From contig JBLDXI010000032.1 of assembly GCA_047495785.1 (NCBI GenBank), positions 1,984,001-2,048,000 on the forward strand: a stretch of 64,000 nucleotides of DNA. The letters are read 5' to 3'. This document shows positions 40,919 to 64,000 of the stretch, one piece after another. A program made the translations under genes and the position numbers. Position 1 is the stretch's first letter. Each line of letters starts with the position of its first letter. Source of the DNA: Lepidodermella squamata (lineage: Eukaryota; Animalia; Gastrotricha). The notes beneath the pieces were generated by a model that saw nothing but the letters and a program-made list of their open reading frames with translations, did not search any database and was not told the DNA's origin.

Positions 40919-41568
40919 TCAGAAGTAATCGGCACAGTTGCAGTTGGACGGGAACAAGCAGTTACAGGTGTTGATGGGTGAAACGCAGCCGAGTTTACAC
41001 GACTGGTGGTTGTAGCAGAGACGGGCGCAGGGCGAGCCGCCGAGTTGGTTGCCAACAATCGCACCCCCAGCACCGCCGAGGCCATTGAGCAGGCCGTTGG
41101 TTCCCAGAGCAGCGCCGATGCCGTTGAGGCCGCCCATACCGCCCAAACCACCCATCATACCGTAACCGCCGAGACCGCCAAGACCACCGAATCCGCCAAT
41201 GCCGCCCATGCCGCCGAGGCCACCGAAGCTGTTGCCAATCATTCCCAAGCCATTGCCAGGTTGAGCGCCGATCAAAGAGCTCTGCATCAATCCAATGCCA
41301 TTAGCTGCTCCTAGGGTGTTGCCGAGAGCTGCCTGGGCGAGTAGCGGGTTGATTTGACGGCGCTCTGAAATTTCAGGAAAATTATTAAAATTTCAAAATA
41401 AATTCAAAACTTACTCCTCATCAAAAACTTTTGCTCAATAAATTTTTCATCGGTTTTTTCGCGGCTATCATCACGAATTTCGCCGTTCGATGGTAACCGG
41501 GCTGAGTCGCTGAGTCCAAGCAGAACAACAGCGGTGAGTAAAAGCGTCAACAAGTTATTCGATGCCAT
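40919..41568 (-). CDS. Secreted prepro-protein: Gly-rich (GGL/GGM/GGF) region plus C-terminal 8-Cys domain
   Basis: Exon 1 41568-41415 (signal MASNNLLTLLLTAVVLLGLSDS plus acidic pro-piece); intron 41414-41365; junction reads MRKRR-QINP. Ends CARLCYNHQSCKLGCVSPINTCNCLFPSNCNCADYF*. Confidence 0.85.
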
Positions 41569-42410
41569 TTTTAGTACTAAAGGTTATGTAGTTAAATGTG
41601 TTTTGTAAATTGTGTGAAATTAAAATGTGAGCTGAAACTGAAATTTTCTTCCCCTCAGCTCATGTATAGGCACGTGCTGCCCAGTCTTGAATCGCGTGCT
41701 TCTATGTTAATTAGCTGGCAGATTGCTTGTTGTTTACTTCGAATTTCCCGCTTTTTCCTTTCCAGGTTCAAGACAGAATTTTTTTAATTAAATTTTATTG
41801 TCATCAGTAATTAAAAGAATAATAATATCTCAATCATTTTTATAATGATATTAAATATTATTTTATGCAAGGCACATTCATCATTTTCCACCACCATCAG
41901 AATAATCAAAATATAATCAACTTTGTGCTTCGATATTGGAAAAGAAAATAAAAAAATTCGCTTTCACATATTTCAAAAATTTGCCAAATTTGGCAAAGTT
42001 CAATATGCAAGCAAATTACTATAATAACAACTTGGTATAGAATATCACAATAAAGGTACAGTATATAATATCATTAATATCACAGCAGGATATTATGTTA
42101 AATGAGGGTGCGTATACACGTTTGATTCGCCGCTCTCCGAAAAAGTTGAGTTATAATTCAATTTTATTAATTATTTTTTATTTCAGCTATAAAAAGTGCG
42201 TATTGTTTGTTCGACACGAAGTGAGCTATATGGAATAATTGCAATATTTAAAGACACTATATCAAGTTATTATATTATTAGAAAAAGTAGAAACTAAAAA
42301 ATTTGAAATTTTTGTGATGAGAAAATTGCTCTCTCGCCACGCATTTTGCAGCTACAAGTTTGATTTTGCCGTCATTTTTTTGATAAGGCATTGTCATATA
42401 ATAACAGTCT

Positions 42411-45400
42411 TTAGCAACGATGAGCCATATAAAAAGCAACCACGCTGGTAAGGACGATAGCCAGGGTAGAGCTGTGCGCTGGCCCTGTCGCGCTGTTTCG
42501 GCACCACGCCGACCACGTCTGCCACAGTTGCTGCGTTGGGGGCGCGTAGATAATAGGCACGGGCGGCGGCGGGATCCAGGCTGTCCACGTGACCGGGGGC
42601 GCAACCGGCTGCGGGACTGGTATAGGCCGAGGTTGCGTTGGTACGACGATGGGTTGAGCGGCGATCGGGGCGACCCAGGCTGTCCAGACAACAGGCGGCT
42701 GCCAGGCGGTCCAAACCACCGGCGGCAGGTACGTTGACCAGACAACGGGCGGCAGGTAGGTCGACCAGACAACCGGTGGAAGGACGGTGGTCCAGACGGG
42801 TGGTGGCTGCCAGGCGGTCCAGACCGGTGGTGGTTGCCAGGCAGTCCAAACCGGCGGGGGTTGCCAGGCCTGCCAGACAGGTGGTGGCTGCCACGCCTGC
42901 CAGACAACAACCGGCTGGATGGTTGTCCAAACAACTGGCGGCTGCCACGTGGTCCAGACAACAGGTGGTTGCCAGGCCGTCCAAACAACAGGGGGCTGCC
43001 ATGCGACCCAGGTGGGAGGGGGTTGCCAGGCCACCCATTGAACGGGAGGTTGCCAGTTGGTCCAGGCGACCTGAGGCTGCCAAGCGGTCCACATAACTGG
43101 AGGTTGCCAGGCGGTCCACATGACGGGTGGGTTCCAGGGTGTCCACATCGTGCGAACTGGAGCCGGTTCGACCCAGCCGTTCCAGACAGGTGAGGGTGGC
43201 ATGATTTGGCGAACTTGAAGCCCGCCATCGCATGGCTGGCCAGCGGCTGGCGGCGGTTGTTGGAACGTACGGCAGATACCGCGAGCTTCATCGTCAGGCG
43301 CGAAATCAGCCGGGCATCGCATGCAGAACGTACCCTGTTGGCAAACCATAGCAACGCCGTAGCGGTTGAAATCGGTAAATCGGGTCGTAAAAGCGATCGG
43401 GTCGATATGGCATTCCGAGCCCTTCGGAACGATGGTGAAGTTGCGAAGGCAGTACTTCGTGACACTCTGCGTCATTTCGTAAGACCCAGCGTCGTATTTG
43501 AGCGATGCAATGTCGACAGGTTGGAACCCGGCGCCACATGTGCAGACACCCTGGTAGCAAACCGCCGCGTTACCGACAGTTGCCGGGTAGTAAGAACCGC
43601 TTTGGCATTGTTGCGTCGCGTTGCAAGCGTCGCCGAAATTGCGAGCTCGGCACCTGTTACCGTCCCAGAACGTGAAGCTCGACATGCCAGTGATGAGACC
43701 GCCCAGGCTGACGCCGACGCCTGACCCGGCGCAGTCGCAGCGCCGATTGCGGCAGACCAGGCCGCGGTTGCTGTCGCACCTCGCGATCGGGATTCGATTA
43801 TCAGCATCGTCGCATTGGTCCATGTAGTTGAGCGTTGTGTATAGGATGCCGGCGAGGTCGTCGTTGTGGCGGCACGTGCCGTCGAAGTCTTCAATGAGAG
43901 GCAGTTTACACTTGAGCACGCCCCATGCGTAGCCGGCGTAGCCACCCTGACCGACGCCCTGCTCGACGCACTCTTGCGTCTCGTCCCATTCTTCGTTGTT
44001 GATGTACCACGGATGCAGGCCGTTGTTGTCGGTTATGCATCGATCGCCAAGTTGAAGCTTTCGATCTAGAAAAAAATCATTCACAAATTATAATAAATAT
44101 CATAAAAATTTGAAAATTAGGGTTCCAGCTCAAATTTTATGAGGTTCCAGCACCACTTAATTTTTCGACTATCACGCCTATCTAACAGGTCCTACTATTA
44201 CGAGTATTTGGGATATTTCCGATTAATTTATGAGATTTATTTCCGCCAGCAGGATCGATATCGATTTTACGTATCGATTTTACAAATAAGTGATTTTTCC
44301 GATTCGCAGTCTTTGTGGCCAGTATTTAAATTATTTTGCATATCGGAATGTGACTGGTACCAAAATGAACAATTCGTGAGTTTTCTTACCAATATCGATC
44401 AAAAAAGGAAGAAATCGAAATTCCAATAAAATCGGCAGAACTTTGAGACGGAACCTTAATTTGATTAATTTTTGTATTATTTAGTTTTAAATTTTTATTT
44501 TTATTCAAATTTTGAATTTTCAAGTTAAAAAAAAAGTAAATTGCTGGCTCTCAGTTTTTATGAACTTATTCATCCCAAATTAACGTTCCTTTTAAATTCC
44601 TGATAGTTGATCTTATCATTTGCTGTCCTCATTTCGAGTCATGTACCGAATTTAATGCCTTGTAAACACTTTCTCTGCCCATTTCAGTATATTACGGGTA
44701 AAAAAGTATGCTAACTATCGTACCGGATGCTACTTGCTAGGTCTAGTGTGCCCTCGTAACACCGTATTGAATTAATTAGCGAAAAGCGTCCTTAGCAACC
44801 GAGAGGTTTTTACGCGGTTGCTAAGGACTCTTGACAATGTGGGACCGTCAATCAAGTGGCTGTGAACTTACAAGGTGCACATCGACTGAACCGGTCCATG
44901 TAGAGTCCAGCACCAGCACAACCGCACATGCCGTTGTCGCAGGGTGGATCAACGACGCCCTGCCAGCGGTTGCATGTCATACCGATACCAATCGCACTGG
45001 GCTGGCAATCTCCGTCTCCATTACACGCCAACTCGCGGCAGGTACCAATCGACGCAACTGCGTTGTTAGCCGTATTCCGCTCGCGGAAGCATTGATGGCA
45101 GAAAGCGCGTCGGTGGCACACCCGGGTTGTGTTGTACTGCGCCCATTGGTCGGGGAACATGGTGCAGGTCTGGCCGGTTGGCACCCAGTGAACGGCGCCC
45201 TGGACGACACAGATGCGGCGCGAGTAGGTCGTTTTCGATGTCTCGTTCCAGTACAAGTTATCGACCGGGTCGTAGCCGGCAACGCAGCGGCATCGGCCCA
45301 ACCGGCATTCGAAACCAGTGTTCGAGATAAGCCCAGAGTTGCACTCTTCAGTCTCGGTACAAGTGTCGCCATAAATTCCTGAGAAATTGAAAAATTTAGA

Positions 45401-46421: not shown

Positions 46422-47409
46422 TGATTGGTTCCAATTGAGTGATTCGCCCTTGTGTATGGGTTGGTTAGTTTAACAAGAAGAGTTAGGGTTGGTGTTTATG
46501 GTTGAGGTGAGATGAAAGTGTACCTGGCGAAACAAGTTGAGCGGCCGGTTTGAAATAATAAATAAATCGAAAAGAACTTGATTTTCGGCTCTTTTATTAG
46601 GCGCGCGTGCGCGGTCACAATTTTTTCTTCTCTATTTCGCGTCCGTGCGAGAACGAGAGCGAGAACGAGCGCGGAAGGGGCTACTATAAGATGACGGGCC
46701 ATCGGCCGCCATGGCAGCCGTTGTGTTTGTTTACAGATACGCCGCGCAACGCGGAAGCAACGCCGCCAAGGCGACGGATCGTTGCCGCGGTCACGCACCT
46801 GCGCGTTGCGAAGCGTGACCGCTTATGCGCGCGCATATATATTTCGAAATTATAATATACATCAGCCGCAAATCGCCTAGCACCGGGTGCGATGGCGCCG
46901 GAAAGCGAACGCTAACCACACAATAAAAAGCGGCGATTTATTTAAGACCCATCCCTCGGGCAATGCGATTGGCGATTTCTTAAGGGACTGTCCAAAAAAA
47001 GAACTGGTAAATATAAATAATATAGGTAGTACTAGTTAATTTCAATGCTGGCCGAACTGTTTCCGCTTCGCTTTTCCGCTCGGCCTCACTCACCTGGACA
47101 ACGCTCGTTAGGTACCCATGGCGCTGGTAAATAATACGCATTACTCATATAGCAGCGCTTTGACAGCAGGTGTAAACTTTGAAATTAAATCTTCGAGAAA
47201 AATGGCCATGCGCATAATAAACGTCAATTTTTTATCAAAGTGTCAAAACTTGCACCAGAAGCTGAAAATGCCCTTGAAATTAATAAATCCGAAAATTATG
47301 CTAAAAACGCCCTGGTGTAGTTACAATTTTATTCGAAAAAGCTTATCAGGAGTAAATACGGGGATAAAAGCAGTGAAAGAAAAACGTCCGATCTGCAGCC
47401 TATTTCCGA

Positions 47410-48037
47410 TCAATTATTGCCGAAACCCGTCCAAATTGGCAGGTCCTCAAGATTAGCCGGATAACTCGGCCACGTCGCCCATTCCATTTCGTGTAACATA
47501 GGTAAAACGCCTTCAATGTAAACGTGGGAATTCGGTCCGAAACAAGCTTTGAATTCAATCAGATTTATGTCGAGCTTGTACATGAATTCGGGTAGATAAA
47601 ATTTGCGCGAATATGACCGCGATATGCCAAATTTCGGCTCGTCGATGGTGTGGCTAGCTTCGACGCTAATTGCCCGTTCAGCCGTAATTACGGTCACTGA
47701 AACCTCGTCAGCTCTGAATCCTGTAAACACACGGATAATTTACAAAATAAAATCGTAATTTTTTAAATTTACCTCGAAAATCAAAGGCCAGCCACATTCC
47801 ACGATCACCATTCCGGAACCTTCGAATCGGATTTTTCAGCGTGAAACACTCTTCATCGGAACTCGGACGGCAATGCAGCGAACACATGGCTGAATTACTG
47901 AGATTCATAGAGGATGGACAGCATGTCGACCTGGGTGAGCTGGGTTTTTCGGGTACCAGGCTAGTTAGAGGACCGTATCGAATTTCCTCATCGACCGGTT
48001 CCACGATTTGAAATTCATCAGTAATATCTTCGGACAT
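47410..48037 (-). CDS. Small heat-shock / alpha-crystallin domain protein, paralog 1
   Basis: FTLKNPIRR…WLAFDFRG|FRADEVSVTV…SVEASH…SRSYSRKFYLPE…GPNSHVYIEG; one short intron. Confidence 0.85.
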
Positions 48038-48854
48038 TACTATAAAAATGAAAAATTTATCATTTTAATAATGAGATTCCAGCAATAAATTTTCCAAATT
48101 TCGAAAGTGTCATTTCTTGATCCCTAATACTGAACCTTACAACCCTGGGATTTTTTTTATATTACTATTTTAGGTATGTAGAATAACTTGCCCTCCTTGG
48201 CCTCCTAGTCAATAAATACCGGAAAAATAACTGATTTGTAGAATCGATACTTGGAATCGATTTCGGCTTTGAATTGATCGGCGAAAACGCAAAATAAGCC
48301 AAGAAAGGACGTAGGTATAGGAAATTTGATTAAACGGAGAAGTAGAAAATCTATTTCGGTGAAATTGAGTTGTGGAGCCTCAATTTTGTGACATGTCCTT
48401 GATTATTAGAAATTAGGATTATTAGGATAGGAAAAAGTTTCAAAAGGCTCCACGAAAGTATCTTAAATGAAAGAAATTGAGAAAAAATTATTTTGGAAAA
48501 CATGATTCCCCCCTTCCCTCCCGTCTTCTGGTTTGAAGGAAAGGATTATTTCAAAAGGAAAATTCTTTAGCTGCTTGAGAACTGCTCGCCGGAATAGAAT
48601 TATCACGCACTGGAGCTCTCAATTAATTTTCCAAAATTCAAAATTTTACATCGATCTATTAAAATTCAAAAATAATTTCAACTTGAACTATAAAACAAGC
48701 ATCGTGTTCCTGAAATTGCAACTTTATTGCCTTGATTCCTATTCTGAAATACCGGTGCGACATGCGAAAACAAAAAGTTACACAAGTAACACGGCGCAAT
48801 AAATGATGATCACATTTTAAGGCATCAAGGTCTCTTAGTTTGTAGGAAAATAAT

Positions 48855-49904
48855 TTAGCAGGTCTTGGTGGTGACGGGCTTGGCGCTGTTCCAGGTGTTG
48901 GTCCAGCCGTTGCACGAGGCGTTGTTGGCCCAGGTGTTGTTAGCCCAGGTGTTGTTCCAGTTGTTCCAGTTGTTACCGGCAGCCCAGGTGTTGTTGCCGC
49001 CGAAAGCACCAGAGTTCTTCGAGGTGATGGCAGCCCAGGTCGGGTTCGACCAGTGCGAGACGGTCCAGGGGTAAGCGGGCCAGGACGACCACTCGACTTC
49101 GGCCGTCTTCGGGATGCAACCCTCGACGTAGAAGAAGCAGTCAGGGCCGAAGAAGGACTTGAACTCGATCTTGGTGATGTCGACCTTGCTCAGGCACTCG
49201 GGCAGAACGAACTTGCGGGAGAACTTACGGGTGACCTGGTGCTCCTTCGAGTCCTTGATCTCGTGGGCAGCCTCGATGACAACGGCGCGCTCGGCCTTGT
49301 TGACGGTGACGCAGACTTCCTCAGGCTTGTAGCCTATTTAGAACAAATTGAGATTATAATTTCGAAAAAATTCGATTCAATTACCGCGGAGGTCGAAGCA
49401 GAGCCAGAGGCCGCGGGAGCCATCGGGGAGGGCGCGGATCGGGTTCTTCAGGGTGAAGTACTCGCACTCGCTGCTGGGGCGGAAAGCGGCCGAGCAGAGG
49501 GTGTTGTTCGAGAAGGCGTTCGAGCCGTCGAAGGCGCCGCTCCACGAGTTAGTGAAGCCACCGAAAGCGTTGTCGAAGGTGTTGTTCCAGCCGTTGTTGT
49601 TCCAGTTGTTGAAGCCACCGAAGGTGTTGCCCAGACCGCTGAAGGTGTTGTTCCAGCCGTTGAAGCCACCGAAAGCCTGGTTGTTCCAGGTGTTGTTGTT
49701 CAGACCGTTGAATCCTCCGAAGGTGTTGTTAAGGCCGTTGAAGCCACCGAAGGTGTTGCTAGCGTTGTTCCAGTTGTTCCAGGCACCAGCCGTCGGGGCG
49801 GCGAAGAAGTCCTTGCCGAAGACGGACGAGTACTTGGAGGGGCAGGCGCCGGCGAAAGCGGCGTTCTCGAAACCAGTAGCAGGGTAAGCGTTGAAAGCGG
49901 CCAT
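48855..49904 (-). CDS. Small heat-shock / alpha-crystallin domain protein, paralog 2, with Asn/Gly/Phe/Trp-rich arms
   Basis: Exons 49904-49385 and 49333-48855. Core FDLRG|YKPEEVCVTV…IEAAHE…TRKFSRKFVLPE. N-arm NNTFGGFNGL repeats; C-arm NNTWA/NNWNNW. Strong C-ending codon bias. Confidence 0.9.
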
Positions 49905-50362
49905 TGCTTATGATTTGATACGAACGTAAAAAGTCAAATGAAATAGAAAGCGATTTAAAATGCTTGAAAGAAGCTTGATGATATTAAACTACCTCAAACG
50001 GGCACTTTTTAAAGCCGCGCTGCGCCGTGAACACCTTGTTACGCAACATCAGCGCCTCTCAGGTCGCGTGGGTTAATTGAGCACGCGCTTTCGGCGCGAA
50101 TGCAAAAAATGCACGCGATTTAAAGCGAATAAACTTGATTGAAATCATGCATGTTATTGAGGGATAAAATGAATGAAACATCGTGCTAAAAATAACAGAT
50201 GCCCTCAGTTAGCAGACATTCAGCGCGTGGACAGATAAGAAAAACAAAAAAGACGGGAGACAATATGTTTTGATTGAAAAATCTAGCTATAAACAATTAT
50301 TATATTTCGGGAAAGAACTGATTACGTCCTGATTATTCGAGATTCGAAACATTTTACAACAG

Positions 50363-53300
50363 CTCTTTTGAATGGCTATGGGAATAAAACTACTTTATTT
50401 ATTTTTGCTAATATTGTTCCATATTGAGCAAATTTTATCTCGTGGAAAAGCGATTCAACAAAAGGTTAGGAAGAATGGGGTTAATTTGGCAATTTTTTCA
50501 ATTTTTCAACCGCACTATATTAGAATGAAGACGAAGTGATATTGCGCGACACGTCCGAAGCCCAGCGGTGGCCAAATCCTATAAAATACTCAATCGACTC
50601 TTGTATGATGAATACTATTGTTTCAATCATTCAATAACAATCATTCAATAATCAGCTCTCAACGCTACCGAAAAGCTAACCGTTCAAGATGCCATAAAAT
50701 ATTGGACCACCGACACCTGCATAGTTTTCACCGAGCTGAGGTTGGTTCCTCCAGACGAAAATGGCATAATATTTGAGAAAATATCCGGCTCAAGGTGAGA
50801 TTTTTCCCCTTCCAGGAGCGTATGTGTGATTTTATTTCCTTTTATAAGTGATTGCTATTCCCCGGTCGGCAAAACTGGTTCTAGCCCGCAAAAAATTACC
50901 TTGACAGCTGCATGCATAGACGTTTGTTATTCTGCTGAACTCAGCCCTGTTTAAGTTTCCAATAATTATTCAGCATCCAGGAAAAATAGCGCATGAGATC
51001 GGACACGCTCTTGGATTGGTAAATATTAAAAATTAACATCCCTTGTTTCATGATTATTACTTGGCATCATTTGCAGCAAGATGAAAATAATCGACCTGAT
51101 CGAGATGATTACATTACCATTGATTTCAACCTCCTGCCCAGGTAATTAATAATTTCCGTAAAAAATCGAATAATGACACCCTGTTTTCACCAGCTCGAAG
51201 GTCAGTCAATTCAACAAAGTCATGGATATGGATGTTTGGGAATTGCCGTACGACTTTTCTTCGATAATGCACGCTGAACCTCGCCAACTCGATCGGTCCG
51301 GCGGGCGAAGTCTGATTGTGAAGCCTAAAGACATGACTTTCTTGTTTACAATGGGACAGCGGCGAAAAATTTCACTCAGCGACGGTCAGCGTGCAACTAA
51401 TCAATTTTCGCAATGTGGATGTAAGTGAAATTCTTTCGTCGCGGATCAATCTGATTCCGAATCAGTCTGATAGGCTCAGACGGAAACCTGCCTAATGTTT
51501 TTGAAGCGAATTTCGAAGACTCGATCATTTAGCAGTCGATTTCACACAATTTAATCACGTGTCCTTATTTCAGACAAATTGATTAAATATTGAAAATTAG
51601 GGCATAAGCATGAAATAAGTCTTTGACTTTATGATCAACTTGTTATGAAAAATTTCCTTGAACTTCATTTACCCACGTTTTTATATGAAGCATGAACAAT
51701 GAGGGGGCAGAATTGACGAAGGAAGGTCATACAATTTGTAGCGAAATTATTTCTAATTTCCAATACTCTTCCCATCAATTATTTTTTTGCAATAAAAATA
51801 GGGGAGGGCGACTGCAGCTACGTTTATTGCAATGGCGGTTACAACAATCCCGACTGCTCAGGCTGCGTTTGCCGCCCAGGAATCGACGGGACTCCCATTT
51901 ACGACGATTCAGGCTATGGTAATGGGTGTTTACCTTCACTTCTGCCTTTCGACACGGCCAAGTGTGGCCCAACCCAGCAGTTCAAAGTTGCGGCTTGTTC
52001 CCGCGGCTGGATCGAATTCCCCAAAATCCCATCCTCGTGCCTGTACAACGTTACTACAGTAAAAAAAGTTTTTTCTGCAAAAATAATATTATAAAAAATA
52101 TTGAAATTATCAGACTAAGAAAGGCGCTGGTTTGGCTTTTGGCTTCGATGCCAGGCCGTTCCGTAACACCGAAAATTGCACCAATAGTAAGCATCAAATC
52201 GATACTAATTTTACGACTTTTGACTTCTCTGATTCGCAGCGAATGAACTTTGCGACGACAATAACGTTGTAGAAATAATTGACACGCGTTCAGCATTTGA
52301 ACCAGCGCACAGGTAATTATATCGATTTTGAGTTTTTTAAGGTGGAATTTCAAAAATTATTGTTTCTCAGATTCTGCACATGCAGTGTTGCAAGTGGCCG
52401 TGCTTATGTTACGACATCCGATTCAGTCTTAGTCTACTACAAGCAAAGCGTTGCTACAACCGATCGAACGCGGCTTTTCTTCTACACGCCATGTGAAGGC
52501 TACAACGCTTTCGCGGTAACTGATGAGTGCAAAATCAGTAATAGCGGCTACGACTACATTGGCACAACTGATAACACGTGGAGCAACAAGAAATGCATGG
52601 CGTGGACCAGCCAGACAAAATACGGCCCGTATGACTTACCGTTGGGTAACGTTGCGGCCGGAGGTAGAGCGGCCTGCCGAAACCCGGCGTCGGCGAACGA
52701 CCCGTTCTGTTACGTTGCACCTGGCGTCACGGAAGATTGCTTGACGACAGATCGCTGTGGTAAGTCTTGATATGAGGGGAAACTAATTTTTTGTGTTCCC
52801 AATGATCCGACGAACCAGAAGTACCGAACCAGTTACCATCAGGGGTTTCAGGCTTTGCGCTCTGGTAAATTTCGATTTTCTTGGTAAAAATCCGAGATCA
52901 ATATGGTGGAAAAGTATCCTGTTTTTACGTTCAATTTAAAATTTTCTTGAAAATTTTACAAAATTGCAATGTAAAACTGGTTGTGGAACTGTTGGGACAC
53001 GCTGTGGGGCGTTCCGTAATCTTGTCTAGACGCGCCTTATTGAGAGGATATATTGAATACCAATATCACGGCGAGATTCAATTCATACACGGTGGCCGAA
53101 AAATTCCGCAGAGCGGGAATTCGCTGCGCATCATTTTAATGAGTTTCAAGAAATTGAGCAGTTCCATTGGCAAAACAATGCTTGAAATTCTTCAACTTCT
53201 TAAAACGCCTCATTAAATTGATGCGCAGCGAATTCCCGCTCTGCGGAATTTTTTTGGCCACCCTTTTTGGCCACGCTCGTAAGCTGTATCTTACGAGCGC

Positions 53301-56300
53301 ATGGGCCCTTTAAACAGAACATAAATGAAGTAGAAATTATGCGATATTTACACTATTTGGTACGGCAACAAAACTGCAAATTCGCAGAACAGCGAATGCG
53401 ACGAAACAGTAAAAACTTGCTATGTAAAAGAGGCATCGAGTTTCTGCGGTTATGTCGCAAGTTGAGAAATTTGCTGTTTTGTCGCGTATGCTGTTTTGGG
53501 TATTTGCTGTTATGACGGTCTGCTCACTATTTCTGTCACAGAGCCGTATGTACGATGTGCATTTGCTTCTGATCTGAAATTTTCGTCATGTCGCACACTG
53601 GCTGAGGGCTGCCGAGCTGGTGAAGTTACGGTAAGCTTCGCCTAAAAACTTGAATAAAACCATAACATCAAATTGTCTCTTTTCTAGCTTGATCGACTCA
53701 ACGGAAAGAAGCTAATCCTAATTGATCATTGGCAATGCAGATACGGGGTTGGTTTTTAATCGTAAAAAAACTGTTTTTAATTCTTTTTTAATGAAGGGAG
53801 CGCGATGCTGTTGGTCAGCTGATACGGGGTACTACGTTAGCAGAAGGGAGGGATGCGCGGCTAATGCGTTAGACGTAAAAGCGTCTTTTATTAACTAAAA
53901 TTGAAAGCATAGCCTAACCTTTTCCCCGCAGTTTGCCGCCTCTTCGAAGCCTTATCCTGTGACCTATAGAGAAAATCATAATATTGTACTAAAGTATTGC
54001 TCGGACAAGGTGAATTTCTGAATTTTTTCAAATCACGCAACAAGTTTTCAAACTTTATTTTATAGGTCAACTTGAAGCGTTGTATCAATTCTGATGGCAC
54101 GATAGCGACCTGCGTTTTAAACAGTGAATCTTGCCCATCGAAAACGGTATGAAGCTATTTAGATTTCAACGTCATTTTTTCATGTCCTGCCGCAGACTGT
54201 CGGTGGAACGTTTTCGTCTGCTTCCAATTGTTTCCTTCCGGTAAGAAATATTGAAGAATTTCGTGAACATTTATTGACGTTGAGATGGTGGTTAGTCTGG
54301 GTTCAGAAACTGCTATAAAAGCGGCACCGAATATCGCTGCATTTCGATGTCAAGTCAATGTGGCGCGGGTGAAACTGATGTAAGGCTTTGAACCGATAGC
54401 TGCCTGCTCATATTTGTTAATGAACAACAGCGCGGTGTGTTCAACTCTTCGGCAAATTCGGCTGACAATTACCGCAGCTGCGTTCAATTCGGCTTCGTTC
54501 AATGTACCGATCCTTCGACATTTGATGTTACCTGTAATAACCCTGCCGTCGGTAAGAGCAGCATTAACGGTGATTTCAATGGGTTTGAAGCACGATTTTC
54601 CCAGGATGCAAGGAGCCGCTAGTCATGTCCCGGCGTGGTATCTTCTCGACTAGCAACGAGTGTTTCGAGTTGGAGGCAGCATTCATCCAGGTGGCTCCGA
54701 ACCACACTGGCGATCTATACGACTACAACGATGCCGTAACTCAGTGCGCTATTGCCGGAGGCATTGTTGCTTCTGTGCAAACGTCGTTCGCGTTGAAGAG
54801 AGCCAGGGCTCAGATGCCGTACCCGACTGGCGGGGTGGTGAGTGCTCAGCATGCTCCGAATACGACAACCTATCGCGATTTCTTGTGGTCCGATGGCACG
54901 CCGCTTCTCAATTCCATCGATGGCGAGTGGATTTGGGCGATGGGCGAGCCAAGCGCGAATTGTGATTTTCATTTCATGGCTTTTCCTATTGTATACGCTT
55001 GATCCTTTTCAGATAAGGCTCCTTGTACTACATTTTTGTGGGCGTTTTCTAACGAAGGACCAGTGCGACCCCTCATGTACGATATGCCTTGCGGCAGAAC
55101 AATATTCCTGATCCATACTCTGTGCGAGGTTGAGCAGCACATAGTTTGCCCTTCTTTTAAGGTTTCTTGTCTAGAATGCATTACCTTTATTCTTTTTCAG
55201 GGTTATCGTTATTGCTATACCTATGGTCTCAATCGTTTCCGATGCATCAGGAGGCATGTACGCTGTGATCCTGGAGAACTTGACGTTAGCTTTTCCTGGA
55301 ATTTCAGCTCCAACTTCAATATTGAATTTTTCAGTACGGGCTGTTCGTCTCTTCGCCAGATCCTCTTGTAAACAAACAGACTTGCGAGAACTTCGGTTAC
55401 GTGCAGTGCACTGATCCTAACGACAACGATGCTGTATCATGCTCACCACTAACCGTCGGTATGTGACTCTATTGTCAAACGATTCTGATCCCAACTCCCA
55501 AAACTAAGGTTGTGCATCTCCGAAGTACCGATCTTTCGAGAGGATATTCCCCGATGAGACTTCGTGCTTGCAAACTAGGAAGATGTTCCTGATCGCCTAC
55601 CCATCCCCCCTGAAGGGAAACTTTGAACATGTGGAAGATGCGGAGAAGATTTGCGCTAATCAAGGGACCGTAATAGCATCCGTCACTACGTACAAGCAGT
55701 ACACAGATATATCGCCAATTTATACCGGTTTAAGTGAAGCTTGGGTGAGTGCCCGCCATGTTTCGGGCACCGATTACATTTGGTACGACGGTAAAATGGT
55801 CGAAAACATTCTACCTAACGGCGAGCAACTTTGGGGTTCTGGACAGCCGGATGGTATTTTGATTTTTCTATGAAAATTGCGCCACAGCCGTGAATTTTCT
55901 AGATGGCCGTGGTTGCACAAAGTTAACGGGTCCAGGTCAGAGGCTTGATGACGAAGAGTGCGCTCATTTGAGAGTTCAGCCCGCTCTCTGCGAGAAGTAC
56001 ATTAAACCGGCGGCTAACTATCGATTCTGTTACGCTTATGGCCTAACGTTCCATTGTGTTGAAGAATCGTCCTCTTGCGACCGTGGAGAAGCCGACGTGA
56101 GGATTTTCACCCATTTGTTTGCTACTAATTTACTATTGCTCTTAGTTTGGCGTGATTAATGGTACTGGCAATTCCGCTGAAAACTGGCGCCAGTGCCAGG
56201 CATTCGGCTGGATTCAGTGCACTGATCCTAGCGATTCCAGTGTCTCTTGTGTTTTACGCCCGACCGGTAATTCACAATAACAAAAACCATTTTTGTGCTT

Positions 56301-56877
56301 GATCGATTTTTATTTAGGCTGTGCGTCTCCGTTGATTCAGTCCTTTGACAGAATTTTCGACTCTCAAGATCATTGTCAACGTACGACCAAGTTCTATGCT
56401 GTGAAGACGCCTTACCACAGCGGGCCATTTTACAACTTCGACGATGCTAACAAGCACTGCGACAGTGTGGCGAATGGTTACAGTGGCACCGTCGCTTCTG
56501 CCATCACGTCCGTCGAGCAAACTCGCTTGAGAAATTTCATGTCAGCAAACAACGTGACGAGAACATATGTCAGCGCTCGCAAGGGTAATGGAGGCGCCTA
56601 CTGGTGGTACTTGGGTAGCCGCATTTACCCGTTTTCTGACGGAATAATTCAGTGGGGTGAAAATCAGCCCGACGGAGCTGATGGTAGTTCCAATATATAA
56701 AACTAATTGGCTGATGACTAATTGTTTGAACTTTCATCGATAGGTGGTGATGAATGTACGTCCTATGTTTACAGCACTTACGCTGGGCAGACGACGACTT
56801 ACTATCTCAACGACATTAGCTGCAATGATGCTTCGATGACGCAAGCTGTATGCGAGGCCTACAAACTCAATGCTTGA
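50363..56877 (+). CDS. Astacin-like mosaic protein 1: astacin-EGF-CUB-like-Kringle-(Cys module + C-type lectin)x3; start codon not located
   Basis: Many short exons: RWPNPIKYSID; WTTDTCIVF; DCYSPVG; HEIGHALGL|QDENNRPDRDDYI; PYDFSSIMHA; MGQRRKISLSD; CNGGYNNPDCSGCVC; Kringle (SGYDYIGT…CMAW…CRNP…PFCY); three CTLDs. Stop at 56875-56877. Confidence 0.85.
53088..53264. mobile_element. MITE family B, copy 2 (opposite orientation)
   Basis: Same long TIRs and reverse-complement interior as 24895-25074; right end damaged. Confidence 0.88.
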
Positions 56878-58005
56878 ATAATTCTATATATTGATGGCTC
56901 AGAATCAGAAGAGCTTCGCCGCTCACTTCAAAAACATGAAATTACCCAAAATTTGTCAATCGACAACATATTAATGCATAGTCATATGAATGCGAGAAGT
57001 TTATATTTGAAATAATGTCGCATGTAGCTGGCATTGAGCCAGTTGTCTGTCTGATGTTAATGTCTTATTTAAAGTCATCATTAAAAACCGAAAATATATT
57101 TTGGAAAACGCATGGAACTCCATAGTAATAAAATGCTCACGACTTCATTAGAAAATGGCTTTATAATTTGGTGCATATGCAAATGAGGTCACTGATATCT
57201 AATAGTCGAGTATGATCCGAGGAACAGCAGCGATCCACTCATTTGATCGCTTTTTGGGACATTCTAGGGTGAAGAATCTCGTTAGCAATCAACAACCTCT
57301 GCCGCACAAACATATCATCAGCCTGAAACATAACGTCGTCTCGATTCGGCCCAGTTTCAAACATTTTTCGCAATAACTGCTTCCTGGATTTATGGGAACT
57401 TCAAGACTGTTTTGCTTGCAATACGATATCAGTTGCAACATCGTTAACAGCACACACTGGTTATATCGACAATTTTGAATTTGCGTAAGGGTCAGATAGA
57501 TTAGAGACAGACCTGGCGCCTATCAAATGTCCCATTTTATTTCCGGTTTACACAAATGAGTGCTGATCGCTTTTATGTGGTCATTCATTCATAAATGCAT
57601 GCCCCAAATCGAATGAACAACCAATTTGAAATTTGATTGAACATTAATTTTCACGTTAAAATGCCCACGATTCAACACATTCAACACACATTCGGGTAAA
57701 AATTCCAACCATCCCGTCCCGATTTGGAGCAATACCTATACCCACCGTCTGAGGACATGCTGTTTAGAAATAGCTCTAACCTCGAGATTCCGTACAAAAC
57801 ATGATGGTTATAACCTTGTTTCCGCCATCGTTTGCTTGTATCCGGACTCATTGTTCGATATAAAAAATATATCGGCGAAACACGTGCCAATCGACTTTTA
57901 TGGCTGCCAGACTACTAAATATTCACGCGATTAACAAAAAGGTCATGTCTGGTTTTCAAATTTTCAAAGAAAAGAGAAGTCATTTATTTGACTGGTGACA
58001 AAAAG

Positions 58006-61000
58006 ATGAGGTTTTTCGTTGCTGCTTTGATAAATGCGGCCGTTGTCATCCAACTTGGCTTGTGCGAAATAAGGCCCTGGCCTAACCCGATCAAATACTC
58101 CCTGCCGAGCAGTTAGTCATTCTCTATTACTTATTACACAGTCTATATTTTCATGTTTATTCCCGCGATGAAGATGCCCTCGATAGTGAAAAGGAGTCGA
58201 TTCGGGCTGCCACCCGATTTTGGAGCTCAGACACGTGCATTCAGTTCTCAGAGATGGAAACGCTACCCTCTGATCAAAACGGGATCGCTTTCCAAAAGTC
58301 CACTTCCTCGGGGCAAGTTGAAATAAATAATTTCTCATTTAGGATTGAACTTGAATATTAATTTCAGGGAATGCCAGTCTGTTGTAGGAATGACAAGCAC
58401 GGCGGCTCCACAGACAATCACCCTAACTTCTTCGTGTTTAAATGTAGCTTGGTTTTATTTCTCAATTTTGTAAGACTCGATGTCTTTTTGTAGGATCCAG
58501 GCAAGATTGCTCACGAAATCGGTCACGCGCTCGGATTTGTGAGTGAAAATAGGCGGAAAAATTGCAATTTTGTACACCCTCTTTTTGTTTCAGGTAGATG
58601 AAAACAACCGCCCCGACCGCGATACATACATTACAATCGATTTCTCGAATTTGCCATCGTAGTTTTTTATTTTTCTTCTAAAATTTCCTTAATTTTTTTT
58701 ATTTATTTCAGTAGCGCTGCGAGCAAATTTAGTATTAATAACGAGACGGATACTTTCCAGACTCCGTACGACTATGGCTCAATTATGCACGCGTCTCCTC
58801 GTCAGATCGATCGGAAAGGGCAACTGAGTCTGATCGTGACCCCGCGCGATATGACCTATCTCTTTATGATGGGTCAACGGCAGAGAATTTCGCTGAGCGA
58901 CGGAAACAGGGCAGCAATGCACTACTCAACATGCGGCTGTAAGCAAAATCCTAGAGTCTTTGATAAGAATCTCAAAAAATATTTGCCAAAACTAACACCC
59001 CTTGGAATTTCACCAATTTTAGGAATTTTTTCTGTTCATTCCCAATCGGAGAAGCTTCCATGAATATCCCACGTAAAATAAGGCCGATTTTTACTTTGAA
59101 TTTTTTTTATAGCTAATAAAAAACTAGGCTAGGTCAAACGTATTTCGGGAAAAGAGCGAATTTGTGTATCAATTCATAAATTTCGCAGAATTTATTAAAA
59201 CCCGTGGAAATTATGAAATTATCTTCCAGCTGATGGAGACTGTTTTTACCTACAATCCTGCAATCGCGGGTACTTCAACGCTAATTGCTCGGGTTGCACG
59301 TGTCGACCTGGTTTCGACCCAGCCGACTCCTGCACTTCGCCCTTGCCGCTGGACGCTAGCTGTGGGACAACTCAGGAGTTCAAATTAGCCGCGTGTTCAC
59401 GAGGCTCGATTGACTTCCCAACTACACCCTCATCTTGTACCTACAAAGTCGCATCGGTTAGCTGTTTTTTAGCTGAAAAACCTTAAAAAATTGTACTTTC
59501 AATTCTAAAAGACAAACAATGCCGGTCTGATATTTGGCTTCGATTCAAGACCTTTCCGAGGTTTGGAGAACTGCAAAAATACTGCTGGTAAATTAATCGC
59601 CACCTTAATAAACATTTTGACCTAATTTCATGTCCCTTTTATAGAGCTTTGTAATAGCGACAATTATGTTGAGCTGATTCAAGGCGATGTTCAGTTCGGC
59701 AGCAGCCGAAAGTGGAATTTTGAATCAATTATTTTGTAAAAATTAGAAATTTATTTTTTAAGGTTTTGCGCTTGTAGTGTGACAAGTGGCCGAGTTCTTT
59801 CGACCAAATCGAATGAAGTCTACGTTTACTACAAACAATCAGCTGCTTCCTCAAACCGGACTCGCCTGTTCTTCTACACGGCCTGTGAGGGTCTCACGGC
59901 TCCGCAGGTGACTCAAGAGTGTAAAATCAGCAACAGTGGTTATGACTATCGAGGACTGGCTAAGAAGACGATATACGGCAAAAATTGCATGTCTTGGTCG
60001 ACGCAGAAATCTTACGGGCCATACGATTTCCCGCTGGCTAACATTCAGACTGTTGCTTGTAGAAATCCATCATCGGCACCTGATCCTTTCTGCTTTATTG
60101 ACGAAAAAAATACTCAGCCATGCCAAAACACCTTCACATGCGGTAATTAGCATTAAAAAAATTAATTTATTTTAATTTAAATTTAATTTGAAAAATTACG
60201 ATTTTTAATTATTTTATTTAAAATGGATCAGAGCCATATGTCAGGTGTCTAAAATCTCCTTCGAAATTATTCTCGGCATGTCGATCGTTGGGACAGGGCT
60301 GCAAGAGCGGAGAAACTCGGGTAAAATCTCGGCTAAATCTCGGCAAAATTTCCAGCTAATTTGCACTGATTTTCATCGGCGCAGCTCGAGTTATTTGCAA
60401 CGATTAAGCCTCTGGTCTTCATCGACCATGTCGCATGTCGAAACGGTGTAAGTAATTCCAAAGATTTTCGCTTCAATAAATCGTGGGTTATGTTATAGGA
60501 CGCAAGGTGCTGCTTTTCTCCTGCTGATCAATCCTATAAAATTGGCCCCGTTAGAGCCAAATGTCAATCAACTGATTATGATGTGAGTGACCTATTTCTT
60601 TTATCGATGAAATTTTGATGATTTGTTTCGATTTAGATGGGAGTTTTCGCTAAACCGTACCCGGCCGAGTACGAAATTAATCATAATTACGCTCTCGGGA
60701 CCTGCGCGAATAATGTAGGTCAATTCGAAAATTCGAAATTACTATCGATAACTCTCTGCTCAGGTCAATTTGAAACGGTGTGTAAACAAGCAAGGAAATC
60801 CGAAAAGCTGCGTTAAACAATCGGAACAATGCCCACCTGAAACGGTTAGATATTATATTACCTAGTGATTCGGCTTTTATGCATTCCTTTTTATCAGACC
60901 ATGGTAGCTGGTCAATTTTCGTCATATGCCAACTGCATGCTCGGGGTATGAAATTAATGTCACCAAAGTCGAATTTGCTACTAATATTAATTATTTTTAA

Positions 61001-64000
61001 AATTTATAAAATTATTAAAATTATGAGGGATATTTTAATTATTTTAATGCTGCTCTGAATTGTTGTAGGACGCGTTCAAATTTTGCTATTCGGCCTACGA
61101 AAATTTCCGCTGTGTCGATTCGAATAGCCAATGCGCTGCCGGAGAGACTAGCGTAAGCTGAATCCTTATTTATTTCATCACTCTCGAAATCATTGAAAAT
61201 GCGTTAGTATGGAGTGTTCAACTCGTCAGCGAATTTCTTGCAAAACCTTCAAAACTGTAAAAATTTCGGCTATATTCAATGCACAAATCCTAATACCGAT
61301 GAAATCACCTGCGCAAAACGGGCTGACGGTAATTTAACATTTTGAGATTCTATTGAAGCTGGAAATAAATATATAGGCTGCCCTAGCCCTACTGTCAAAT
61401 CGTTCGCTTACATTTTCCCCGACTCGATTTCATGCCTTGAGAAGGAGTAGGTGTTCACGCAAATCACTCCCATCGACCACGAGGGCAATTTTTACGACAC
61501 TAGCGATGACGCTGCCCGGCAGTGTGAACTCTTCGGCGGCAAACTCGCATCCGTTACCTCGGCCCTGCAGCAAGAGTACGCCAGGGCTGTCATGCCCTAC
61601 CCAACTGGAGGAATTGTAAGCGCGCGTCACGTGACTGGGACTCAGCGTGATTTCGTTTGGGGCGACGGTACCAAACTGGAACCGTTCGAAAATGGGGTCA
61701 AGCAATGGAGCAATGGCAACCCGAGTGGCGAAATCGATGGCAACGGTGTTAGTAAGTCCCAGATGTCTTATTATTTTCAAGTATAACCTTGATTCCTGTG
61801 TATAGGCGATGAGTCTTGTACGGTTTATTTATGGGCATCAGTCACGCCTGCAGCTGCGTTCCTAACCGATGATATGTGTTCGGACACTGGCAACGCCCAT
61901 GCATTGTGTGAGACGTTCGAAAACAGGGTACAATATCGATCAAGAAAAATCAATTTTTTTTAATTTTCGAATTATTAAGGGCTTCCGTTTCTGCTATAAA
62001 TATGGCCTCGACTTCAGATGCATCACACGTCTAAGGGCATGCGGCTCGGACGAGACTGATGTAATATTGTGAAAAAAATTTTAAAAATATTCGGCATGCC
62101 CTTATTGTTTCAGTTCGGTATTTTCAAGTCTTCATCGAATTTTTCGCAAAATTTGGCTGATTGCCAAAATTTCGGTTGGGTCCAATGCACTGATCTGTCA
62201 GCTAGCAATGCTATTTCCTGTTCTCCCAGGATAACAGGTTCGATATTAGGAATGAAAAGTCCACCTTGAACTGTCGATTTTTTTCAGGTTGCCAATCGCC
62301 GAAAATTATGTCTTTTTCAAGAATATTCAAGGACGAAGCCAGCTGTTTGAGCGAGATCAAGTTGTTTTTCAGGACTAAATCGATTGCGCACGTCAACGGG
62401 TTCAACGGCGCTAAGGAGGCTGAGAAAGAATGCGCCACGCAAGGAGCTGTTTTAGCGTCTATCACGACGTCGAACCAGCTGGTAGATGCCAGGCTCGCCT
62501 TTCTTACCGGACAGCTAATTTGGGTTAGCGCAAAGCGCGATAATGGCAATAACTACGTCTGGTTAGATGGCACTGCCGTCCAGAGTCCGTTGCCGGGTGG
62601 GCTGGACTTGTTGACGTCGCCGCCTCGTAATAATCATTTTTTATATTATTTCCAATTTTTAATTAAAAAAAAATGTGTTATTTTATAGCAGAGCAAAAAT
62701 TCAAAGCTTGGTTTTCAATTTTCTATTTTTTTTAGCATTGCTGCGCTAACTTGTTCTTGCTCCCTTTTTTGCGCGATTGTCGCGTTAAAATTTGCTCTTC
62801 TGTCGTTTTGCTCCCAAGCCCTTGTGCAAATCGCAAATACCAAAGAACGATTCCTTAGGTATATAATTCCTATATAATTCCTATAATTCCTTTCATTTCA
62901 CTAAAATTAAGACTCTTGAGGCTCTAAATATTTATTCTTTAATTCGAAAATTTGAAAATTAATTGAAATTAATTGAACTTTGAAAAAAAATTAATTTGAA
63001 AATTAAATCAGCCTTCAGTTTTTAATTTTTAATTGAATTTTATTCATGGGTTGTAGAACTGGACTGTACAATAATGGCAGGATCACCTGCAGTACTGGAT
63101 GACCTGAGTTGTTCGGCCGATAATCTTGGTTACGCAATTTGCGAGAAGTACGTCAAGAATACAAACGGCTTCCGTTTCTGCTACCAGTACGGCTTCAAGT
63201 TTCGTTGTATCGAGGCCGAGAACCAATGCGAATCGAATGAGCAAGACGTAAATATGAAAACCTGTTCATCTTGCCCTAAATTCAAGTTTCTATATTAATC
63301 CAACAGTTCGGAGAATTCACCGCTGATGATCGTATGACGAATCTGCAAAATTGCCAGAATTTCGGCTGGATGCAATGCACTGATCCAAATAATAACGATG
63401 CAGTTTCTTGCCCGTTGCGAAGCAATTGTAAGTCTTTAATAGGTCTAAACCTTAGCACCACCCAAAACTTGAGGTTCCAGCACTTCAGTTTAAATCACTA
63501 ATTTTCCTGGTTTTTTTCGAATTTTTCGAATTTTCGTGTTCGATAACCATTCATAAATTATTTTTGTTTCAAGTCTTCGCAGAATGCCAAGCCCCTAAAT
63601 TTCTCTCCTTCGCAAGACTGTTTGGTACTGAGGATTCGTGCCTGAATACTGTCAAAAAGATCAACGGCTATGCCCCCTTATACGGCGGTTACTTCTCCGG
63701 CTTCGACGATGCCACAAAAATGTGCGCAGACAATGGCAGAGCCCTCGCATCGTTGTCAACGTCCTCACAATTGCAACAAGCTAAAACTTACCTTATTTCC
63801 AAGAGCGTACCTCACGGCATAGTTTCAGCTCGTCGCGGGTCTGATGGCAACTTCGCGTGGGCTGACGGCTCGGATTTTCCTGGATCTTACCCTAGCAATC
63901 AGCTTCTATGGGGTTATGGCCAGCCTGACAGTAAGGAATTGTTTACCTCACCTTAAAATCGGAATTAATTTGTCAATTTTCTTTCCTAATAGACGAAGGA
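58006..64000 (+). CDS. Astacin-like mosaic protein 2 (tandem paralog; runs off the window end)
   Basis: MRFFVAALINAAVVIQLGLCEIRPWPNPIKYSL; WSSDTCIQF; ECQSVVG; HEIGHALGF|VDENNRPDRDTYI; PYDYGSIMHA; EGF, CUB-like, Kringle (SGYDYRG…CRNP…PFCF); at least three Cys-module+CTLD units. Intron positions mirror paralog 1. Confidence 0.88.

What the first reader, a model, noticed from the sequence alone, without database searches (positions are those of the whole stretch)
50992..58800. Astacin pair with Asp as third zinc ligand and no Tyr switch
Seen in both paralogs: HEIGHALG(L/F)(Q/V)DENNRPDRD (Asp codons 51080-51082 and 58597-58599) in place of HExxHxxGxxHE, and Met-turn SIMHA in place of SxMHY. The catalytic Glu, first two His, family Glu and RxDRD are intact. 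Known: the metzincin consensus allows Asp here (for example bacterial snapalysin), but astacins use His plus a Tyr switch. Two well-diverged paralogs share both changes, which suggests a maintained, re-engineered metal site rather than decay. Inference: an undescribed astacin subfamily, either active with altered chemistry or a binding-only pseudo-enzyme.
Basis: partly seen in the sequence, partly recalled or inferred. Interest (0 to 1): 0.8.

Follow-up and report, generated by a model that had tools for sequence, protein, structure and literature searches.

The report
Astacin pair with His-His-Asp metal site
Two neighbouring, expressed animal genes encode secreted astacin-type zinc-protease domains in which two of the family's four protein metal ligands are replaced (His to Asp, Tyr to Ala); selection has kept this unusual site, but whether it still cuts protein or only binds is untested.

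Summary
Two tandem genes on the + strand (A from 50372, B from 58006) encode astacin domains reading HEIGHALG(L/F)(Q/V)DENNRPDRD and SIMHA. Asp sits in the third-His column and Ala in the zinc-Tyr column of an alignment with 29 canonical astacin domains.

- **Splicing:** spliced contigs of a 2015 run carry the 51018|51077 junction, so gene A's mRNA encodes Asp. Gene B's junction is inferred by homology only.
- **Selection:** the paralogues are old (56% identity, synonymous sites saturated, pN 0.29). The metal-site block is their best-conserved 30 residues (27/30), mostly through different codons.
- **Architecture:** both proteins continue as EGF-like, CUB-like, kringle, then Cys-rich and lectin-like modules. 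Neither has the astacin propeptide Asp-switch motif, and B has no propeptide.
- **Relatives:** a search of 1.84 billion protein representatives found no close relative. The only other Asp-plus-no-Tyr astacins I found are two myxobacterial homologues that look dead.
- **Earlier notes:** this scan already flagged the same motif on other DNA of this genome (s1-393978, unchecked).

Verdict: a new variant of a known kind. I favour a non-proteolytic or feebly active binding module (about 0.5) over an active His2-Asp protease (about 0.38).

The parts
50372..50464 (+). Gene A exon 1: start codon and signal peptide (MAMGIKLLYLFLLILF...)
   Evidence: hydrophobic N-terminus
50524..50602 (+). Gene A exon 2: short linker NEDEVILRDTSEAQ with no FxGD Asp-switch motif, then RWPNPIKY, the start of the astacin domain
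   Evidence: an X1 loose end at 50656 carries the last 14 bases of this exon, confirming junction 50602|50656
50656..50794 (+). Gene A exon 3: astacin N-terminal subdomain (…DTCIVF…)
   Evidence: Pfam PF01400 partial hit; X1 contig at 50678-50766
50849..50921 (+). Gene A exon 4: edge strand DCYSPVG and the second Cys pair
50974..51018 (+). Gene A exon 5: HPGKIAHEIGHALGL (His92, Glu93 and His96 equivalents)
51019..51076 (+). Gene A phase-0 intron inside the zinc motif (GT..AG, 58 nt)
   Evidence: X1 spliced joint 51017>51076 with cut +1, absent from the DNA run X2
51077..51141 (+). Gene A exon 6: Q-D-E-NNRPDRD. Asp codon GAT at 51080-51082 replaces the third zinc His; the family Glu follows
51194..51420 (+). 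Gene A exon 7: Met-turn SIMHA (51261-51275; Ala codon GCT at 51273-51275 replaces the zinc Tyr) and the C-terminal helix
   Evidence: Pfam PF01400 at 31.2 bits, cutoff 22.5; X1 contig at 51327-51415
51802..52312 (+). Gene A exons 8-10 (51802-52058, 52114-52186, 52240-52312): EGF-like module and CUB-like region
   Evidence: X1 loose end 52058 to 52114 and joint 52312|52371; the EGF-like motif is collinear with nematode-type astacin tails
52371..52759 (+). Gene A exon 11: end of the CUB-like region plus the kringle domain; ends at a conserved phase-1 donor
   Evidence: Pfam PF00051 at 37.4 bits, cutoff 34.3
53542..53630 (+). Gene A next exon (EPYVRC…C…GC…GE): first Cys-rich module. The gene probably continues to about 56.9 kb through Cys-rich and lectin-like exons
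   Evidence: Same acceptor, phase and length as in gene B; X1 coverage downstream
58006..58111 (+). Gene B exon 1: signal peptide MRFFVAALINAAVVIQLGLC followed directly by EIRPWPNPIKY, so there is no propeptide
58174..58443 (+). Gene B exons 2-3 (58174-58312, 58368-58443): astacin N-terminal subdomain; the intron between them is GC-AG
   Evidence: Pfam PF01400 partial hit
58494..58538 (+). Gene B exon 4: DPGKIAHEIGHALGF
58594..58658 (+). Gene B exon 5: V-D-E-NNRPDRD. Asp codon GAT at 58597-58599 replaces the third zinc His
   Evidence: Junction inferred by homology, not seen in reads
58712..58938 (+). Gene B exon 6: Met-turn SIMHA (58779-58793; Ala codon GCG at 58791-58793)
   Evidence: Pfam PF01400 at 35.8 bits
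59230..60142 (+). Gene B exons 7-10 (59230-59456, 59512-59587, 59645-59711, 59763-60142): EGF-like, CUB-like and kringle
   Evidence: Pfam PF00051 at 39.8 bits
60232..60320 (+). Gene B next exon (EPYVRC… Cys-rich module). The gene probably runs on to the end of the window through Cys-rich and C-type-lectin-like exons
   Evidence: weak Pfam PF00059 hits at 61451-61783 and 62206-62685

Best explanation
**Shown.** A and B are real, intact, anciently duplicated genes, and A is transcribed. They encode secreted mosaic proteins: signal peptide, astacin domain, EGF-like, CUB-like, kringle, then Cys-rich and lectin-like modules. In the astacin domain, two of the four protein ligands of the catalytic zinc are replaced: the third His by Asp and the Met-turn Tyr by Ala. 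Every other hallmark is kept, and the metal-site block is the most strongly conserved part of the protein.

**Inferred.**
- The domain still folds and probably still holds a metal through His-His-Asp. One anionic ligand (Asp) would stand in for neutral His plus the Tyr oxygen.
- Three features argue against ordinary astacin activity: the transition-state-stabilising Tyr is gone, there is no zymogen propeptide, and the mature N-terminus is too short to plug in as in active astacins.
- It therefore most likely works as a non-proteolytic, or at best very weak, peptide-binding module. It would act together with the lectin-like, kringle and CUB tail in extracellular recognition or matrix binding.
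For: - **Intact genes.** Open reading frames run across 10-11 exons with identical intron positions and phases.
- **Spliced mRNA for A.** X1 contigs carry the motif intron junction and others.
- **Selection.** pS is 0.84 (saturated) against pN 0.29.
- **Conserved site.** The metal-site window is 27/30 identical against 56% overall, and 17 of 28 identical residues use different codons.
- **Column equivalence.** Asp/His and Ala/Tyr align; Glu93, Glu103, RxDRD, Met and four Cys are retained.
- **No propeptide.** B has none, and A has only about 25 residues without an FxGD motif. The family review treats the propeptide with its zinc-blocking Asp as part of the constant core (PMC9848320).
- **Tyr matters.** Replacing Tyr149 even by Phe gives much reduced efficiency (PMC3890501 citing Yiallouros 2000).
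- **Other cases look dead.** P0055 has Glu to Gln, HY to QM and no propeptide. P0054 lacks its N-terminal half.
- **Genome context.** Unchecked scan notes describe many 'dead astacin'-EGF-CUB-kringle-lectin genes in this genome.
Against: - The catalytic Glu is kept in both copies after saturating divergence, and with different codons. Dead astacins usually lose it, as P0055, P0006 and P0016 do.
- His-His-carboxylate plus water is a fully competent catalytic zinc site in other zincins. Asp occupies exactly this motif position in snapalysin-type enzymes (PMC3890501).
- The substrate-binding edge strand (C-x-S-x-VG) is intact.
- Gene A's short acidic linker could act as a mini-propeptide.
- There is no biochemical or structural test. 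I could not fold the spliced protein with the tools.
Confidence: 0.5

Rival explanations
1. Active metalloproteases with a re-engineered, snapalysin-like His-His-Asp zinc site. The Asp carboxylate replaces both the neutral His and the Tyr oxygen. The retained Glu acts as general base, and the EGF, CUB, kringle and lectin-like tail targets the enzyme to substrates.
For: - Glu93, His92, His96, Met and Glu103 are all retained, and the site block is the most conserved region of the protein.
- The two ligand changes are coupled and fixed in both old paralogues.
- Asp is an accepted third ligand in the metzincin motif, and carboxylate ligands are normal in gluzincins (PMC3890501).
- CUB/EGF tails are typical of working astacins (PMC9848320; PMC2824743).
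Against: - No residue replaces the Tyr in transition-state stabilisation.
- There is no zymogen latency device, and B has no propeptide at all.
- B has only about 4 residues before the conserved Trp, against 9 in crayfish astacin (the crayfish figure is from my own knowledge of that sequence).
- The only other Asp/no-Tyr astacins found look inactive.
Confidence: 0.38
2. Decaying pseudogenes: the two substitutions are early steps of degeneration with no maintained function.
For: Ligand loss is the usual route to dead proteases. The bacterial Asp-type copy P0054 is truncated.
Against: - Both genes keep open frames over 10-11 exons and all splice signals.
- dN is far below the saturated dS.
- Gene A is transcribed and correctly spliced.
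- The altered site is the best-conserved block.
Confidence: 0.03
3. Gene-model artefact: the mature mRNA uses another splice site, so the protein has a normal His, or the two halves belong to different transcripts.
For: The motif is split by an intron in both genes. Gene B's junction was not seen in reads.
Against: - The X1 spliced contig joins 51018 to 51077 exactly.
- Gene A's motif intron has no other AG before the acceptor. Gene B's has one, and using it runs into an in-frame stop.
- Position and phase are identical in both genes.
Confidence: 0.02

Closest known systems
Astacin family metallopeptidases (MEROPS M12A, Pfam PF01400), especially astacin-EGF-CUB types such as nematode NAS subgroup III and dpy-31-like proteins
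   Same: - Pfam astacin hits are above the cut-off.
- HExxHxxG helix, family Glu plus xxRPDRD, Met-turn S-I-M-H, four conserved Cys and the RWPN..Y N-terminal motif are all present.
- An EGF-like C-NGGY-NP-C-C-C-PG module and a CUB-like region follow the domain.
   Different: - The third zinc His is Asp and the zinc Tyr is Ala.
- There is no Asp-switch propeptide.
- The tail adds a kringle, Cys-rich modules and lectin-like modules.
- The best database relative scores only 58.7 bits over 75 residues.
Snapalysin-type metzincins (M7) and other HEXXHXXGXXD zincins
   Same: An identical extended motif, with Asp at the third-ligand position and a Met-turn methionine downstream (PMC3890501).
   Different: No sequence kinship beyond the motif. 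The window proteins match only the astacin profile and carry the astacin-specific E-xx-RxDRD and SIMH elements.
Myxobacterial M12-family homologues P0054 (Archangium sp. MAG, locus L005) and P0055 (Logan assembly)
   Same: Astacin domains with GFYDE (Asp for the third His) and no Met-turn Tyr (SIMHV and SIMQM). P0055 has a signal peptide but no propeptide, like gene B.
   Different: - They are bacterial and single-domain.
- P0055 has also lost the catalytic Glu (HQLMH).
- P0054 lacks the N-terminal subdomain.
- They are not close relatives of the window genes, so the change arose independently.
Pseudoproteases in general (for example iRhoms and CspC), and the 'dead astacin' genes noted elsewhere in this genome
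   Same: A conserved protease fold under purifying selection with an altered catalytic apparatus and extra binding domains (for the concept; scan notes, unchecked).
   Different: Here the general-base Glu and two of three motif ligands are intact, so loss of catalysis is not evident from sequence.

Membership tests
Astacin (M12A, PF01400) | Significant match to the astacin catalytic-domain profile | tested here: met
   Exon 7 of A scores 31.2 bits and exon 6 of B scores 35.8 bits, against a cut-off of 22.5. N-terminal exons give weaker partial hits.
Astacin (M12A, PF01400) | Zinc motif HExxHxxGxxH with three His ligands | tested here: not met
   The first two His and the Glu are present. The third position is Asp in both genes, and in gene A's mRNA.
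Astacin (M12A, PF01400) | Family-specific Glu followed by xxRxDRD | tested here: met
   D-E-NN-RPDRD in both genes.
Astacin (M12A, PF01400) | Met-turn SxMHY with the zinc-binding Tyr (tyrosine switch) | tested here: not met
   SIMHA in both genes. Met and His are kept, and Tyr is replaced by Ala.
Astacin (M12A, PF01400) | Two conserved disulfide pairs (four Cys) in the catalytic domain | tested here: met
   All four Cys columns are occupied in the alignment with 29 canonical domains. The bonds themselves are inferred.
Astacin (M12A, PF01400) | Propeptide with a zinc-blocking Asp (FxGD Asp switch) | tested here: not met
   B: the signal peptide abuts EIRPWPNP. A: about 25 residues with no FxGD motif.
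Astacin (M12A, PF01400) | Zinc-dependent endopeptidase activity | not testable with these tools
   Needs recombinant protein.
Snapalysin (M7) / Asp-type metzincins | HExxHxxGxxD motif plus Met-turn | tested here: met
   The motif and Met are present. This is a resemblance in site chemistry only.
Snapalysin (M7) / Asp-type metzincins | Sequence homology to the M7 family | tested here: not met
   The Pfam scan at E up to 1 returned only Astacin for the catalytic exons.
Kringle (PF00051) | Profile match above the gathering score | tested here: met
   37.4 bits (A) and 39.8 bits (B), against a cut-off of 34.3.
C-type lectin domain (PF00059) | Profile match above the gathering score in downstream exons | tested here: inconclusive
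   20.0 and 19.1 bits, against a cut-off of 22.6, on single exons of gene B. Other exons gave no hit.
Non-peptidase homologue (pseudoprotease) of M12A | Loss of a residue indispensable for catalysis | tested here: inconclusive
   The general-base Glu is kept. Two metal ligands are changed, one to a competent ligand (Asp). The Tyr loss lowers activity in astacin but need not abolish it.

The most novel reading that the evidence does not exclude
These are working proteases: the first astacins with a His-His-Asp catalytic zinc site, no tyrosine switch and no zymogen latency. That would be an independent reinvention of the snapalysin or gluzincin-style carboxylate ligand inside the astacin fold, expanded in one poorly sampled animal lineage and coupled to lectin, kringle and CUB targeting modules.
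Probability: 0.35. Interest if true: 0.72.

Novelty: new variant of a known kind. Interest (0 to 1): 0.5.

Why it matters
Astacins are defined by the HExxHxxGxxH motif plus the SIMHY tyrosine, and surveys filter on those motifs, so variants like this are excluded from view. A selectively maintained His-His-Asp site without the Tyr offers one of two things. It could be a natural experiment on how far the metzincin metal centre can be remodelled while staying functional. Or it could be a clean example of an astacin-derived pseudoprotease recruited into a lectin-like recognition protein. The coupled loss of Tyr whenever Asp replaces the third His is seen here and, independently, in myxobacteria. 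That is a testable structural rule. The practical importance is modest until activity or metal binding is measured.

Tried and rejected
- **ESM Atlas look-up of exon 7:** only low-scoring, unrelated bacterial clusters.
- **Rfam scan of the window:** nothing.
- **Metagenome DNA pattern for DENNRPDRD:** three hits, all non-astacin chance matches. Two share a conserved non-coding-looking stretch.
- **Prokaryote genome pattern for HExxHxxGxxDExxRxDRD:** one chance hit (Paraburkholderia, L004) and one real astacin (L005).
- **Taxon assignment:**
  - A 433-aa exon (32085-33383) gave no hit at E up to 1e-10.
  - The SLC36-like exon (35010-35936) matched only unnamed ENA metagenome proteins at 50-66% identity, and named animals at 38% or less.
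  - The organism therefore stays unresolved. Other agents' 'rotifer' and 'nematode' guesses are unverified.
- **dN/dS as a ratio:** abandoned because synonymous sites are saturated. Only pN much lower than pS is reported.
- **CUB assignment:** stays weak. There is no Pfam hit on split exons, only collinear low-score similarity to CUB regions of other astacins.
Full report
**What is there**

The window is eukaryotic DNA with short GT..AG introns of 50-62 nt. Two genes lie head to tail on the + strand.

- Gene A has 11 exons from 50372 to 52759, plus at least one further exon at 53542-53630.
- Gene B has 10 exons from 58006 to 60142, plus at least one further exon at 60232-60320.
- All intron positions and phases correspond between the two genes. 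One B intron is GC-AG.
- A motif scan of all six frames found no other astacin gene in the 64 kb.

**Check of the observation**

The spliced translations read ...PGKIAHEIGHALGL|QDENNRPDRDDYITIDF... in A and ...PGKIAHEIGHALGF|VDENNRPDRDTYITIDF... in B. The Asp codons are at 51080-51082 and 58597-58599, exactly as reported. The Met-turns are PYDFSSIMHAEP and PYDYGSIMHASP.

- Pfam recognises the exons as Astacin PF01400, at 31.2 and 35.8 bits against a cut-off of 22.5.
- In a MAFFT alignment with 29 canonical astacin domains from the hits, Asp occupies the third-His column and Ala the Tyr column.
- The same alignment shows that His92, Glu93, His96, the family Glu, RxDRD, the Met-turn Met and His, the C-x-S-x-VG edge strand and four Cys are all in place.
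- PDB alignments agree. Ala aligns with Tyr of meprin alpha SLMHY, and the Glu after the Asp aligns with the family Glu of Limulus astacin 8A28.

**Splice junction**

Two public runs hold this DNA.

- Run X2 covers the locus continuously and is presumably the DNA source.
- Run X1 (2015) is 99% or more identical for most of its contigs that lie on this stretch. It has zero depth over introns and intergenic DNA.
- X1 carries GT..AG joints at 51018|51077 (the motif intron) and 52312|52371, and loose ends joining 50602|50656 and 52058|52114.
- None of these joints occurs in X2.
- X1 therefore behaves as a transcriptome. Gene A is transcribed and its mRNA encodes Leu-Gln-Asp-Glu.
- The motif-intron joint rests on one contig with 29 bases on its shorter side.

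Its junction is inferred from identical position and phase. The alternative AG in the intron leads into an in-frame stop.

**Maintained or decaying**

- A and B are 56% identical over 467 aligned residues.
- Synonymous sites are saturated (pS 0.84), while pN is 0.29 in every domain. The duplication is therefore old and both copies have been under purifying selection.
- The best-conserved 30-residue window of the whole alignment is the metal-site block, at 27/30.
- In the 31-residue block around it, 17 of the 28 identical residues use different codons. The identity therefore reflects selection on the protein and not recent gene conversion.

**Architecture**

- After the catalytic domain comes an EGF-like module, C-NGGY-NP-C-C-C-PG. 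It is collinear with the module that follows the astacin domain in Parastrongyloides and other astacins.
- A CUB-like region follows. The evidence is weak: low-score collinear similarity only.
- A kringle follows, with Pfam PF00051 above its cut-off in both genes.
- Both kringle exons end at a conserved phase-1 donor and are followed by a homologous 89-nt exon, EPYVRC...C...GC..GE.
- Beyond that lie repeated Cys-rich and C-type-lectin-like exons. Pfam PF00059 scores 19-20 bits there, just under its cut-off.
- The genes are therefore much longer than the flagged span.

At the N-terminus:

- B's signal peptide is followed directly by EIRPWPNP, so it has no propeptide and only about 4 residues before the conserved Trp.
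- A has about 25 residues between the signal peptide and RWPNP, without the FxGD Asp-switch motif.

**Relatives and literature**

- A profile of the SIMHA exon was searched against 1.84 billion representatives. It gave only 53 hits with E below 1e-3.
- The best was a Nippostrongylus astacin at 58.7 bits. The top hits were scattered over nematodes, an insect, a cnidarian, a tardigrade and an oyster, so there is no close relative.
- None of the retrieved animal astacins has Asp at ligand three. Some have Tyr replaced by Phe or His with the third His kept.
- A degenerate DNA pattern for HExxHxxGxxDExxRxDRD over 185,579 prokaryotic genomes found one real case, an Archangium MAG (L005).
  - Its product P0054 reads HELMH..GFYDE with SIMHV, but lacks homology over the N-terminal subdomain.
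  - Its relative P0055, 59% identical, reads HQLMH..GFYDE with SIMQM and has a signal peptide but no propeptide.
  - Eight other myxobacterial relatives are canonical (HE..H..G..HE, SIMHY). The one I read in full (P0057) has a long propeptide.
- So Asp at ligand three came with loss of the Tyr in an independent lineage, and there it looks non-catalytic.
- The 2023 family review defines astacins by HEXXHXXGXXH, EXXRXDRD and SIMHY, and screened its sequence sets for these and for the propeptide Asp. It lists kringle and C-type lectin among the accessory domains seen in astacins (PMC9848320).
- Full-text searches for astacin together with HEXXHXXGXXD, 'third histidine' or pseudoprotease found no description of an Asp-type astacin.
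- PMC3890501 documents Asp as third ligand in HEXXHXXGXXD zincins such as snapalysin. It also reports that Tyr149-to-Phe astacin works with much reduced efficiency.
- Unchecked notes of this scan report the same Asp/no-Tyr motif as an 'expanded subfamily' on another piece of this genome (s1-393978). They also report many 'dead astacin'-EGF-CUB-kringle-lectin genes there. I could not read that DNA.

**How it most likely works**

Shown: these are expressed, selectively maintained secreted mosaic proteins with an astacin fold and a remodelled ligand set.

Inferred: metal binding is probably retained through His-His-Asp, because the whole site block is the most constrained part of the protein.

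- For catalysis: the general-base Glu is retained in both copies, and His2-carboxylate zinc sites are chemically competent.
- Against catalysis: the transition-state Tyr is missing, there is no latency propeptide, B's N-terminus is too short, the only other natural examples look dead, and 'dead' paralogues are reported in this genome.

I put a non-proteolytic or feeble binding module at about 0.5, an active His2-Asp protease at about 0.38, and pseudogene or artefact readings at 0.05 together.

**Novelty**

This is a new variant of a known kind. The genes belong to the astacin family by homology but fail three of its defining sequence features: the third His, the Tyr and the Asp-switch propeptide. 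Interest is moderate (0.5). It would be clearly higher if activity were shown.

The organism is unresolved. A transporter exon finds 50-66% identical proteins only in unnamed ENA metagenome assemblies, and named animals at 38% or less.

Noticed in passing
window 53155-53548: A very high-copy repeat sits inside gene A's 782-nt intron after the kringle exon. Summed contig depth in the DNA run X2 is about 20,000, against about 85 for the flanks. It is also present in the transcript-like run X1.
   Followed up: no
window 58313-58367: Gene B has a GC-AG intron (donor GCAAGT) where gene A has a normal GT-AG intron at the same position and phase.
   Followed up: partly
window 53542-57000 and 60232-64000: Downstream exons of both genes repeat a set of modules: FRFCY.YG..F.C…C…E.DV, NF..NC.NFGW.QCTDP and GC.SP….F.RIF, followed by a C-type-lectin-like exon. 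Pfam does not recognise the Cys-rich modules.
   Followed up: partly
L005:316-930 (-) and P0055: These myxobacterial astacin homologues have Asp for the third His and no Met-turn Tyr. P0055 also has Gln for the catalytic Glu and no propeptide, and P0054 lacks the N-terminal subdomain. NCBI annotates P0054 as 'M12 family metallopeptidase'; P0055 carries no name.
   Followed up: partly
window 47112-47453 (+): An open frame ending ...PINYCRNPSKLAGP looks like part of another kringle, upstream of gene A.
   Followed up: no
window 48660-49910 (-), 15240-16360, 40920-41400 (-), 42280-44090 (-): These are long low-complexity or repeat-rich open frames: Asn/Gly/Trp-rich 'NNWNN..FGGFNG' repeats, Gly/Ser-rich 'GSSSGHGSQPSSGSS' tandem repeats, Gly-rich repeats, and a 55% GC Cys-rich frame. 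They probably encode secreted structural proteins.
   Followed up: no
window 35010-35936 (+): An SLC36-like amino-acid transporter exon. Its nearest relatives (50-66% identity) are only unnamed proteins from ENA metagenome assemblies, and named animals reach 38% at most. The host lineage is poorly represented in public proteomes.
   Followed up: partly
L001:1181-1207 and L003:2901-2927: Two unrelated metagenome contigs share a long identical stretch around the chance DENNRPDRD match. It translates with stops and looks like a conserved non-coding or rRNA-like sequence.
   Followed up: no
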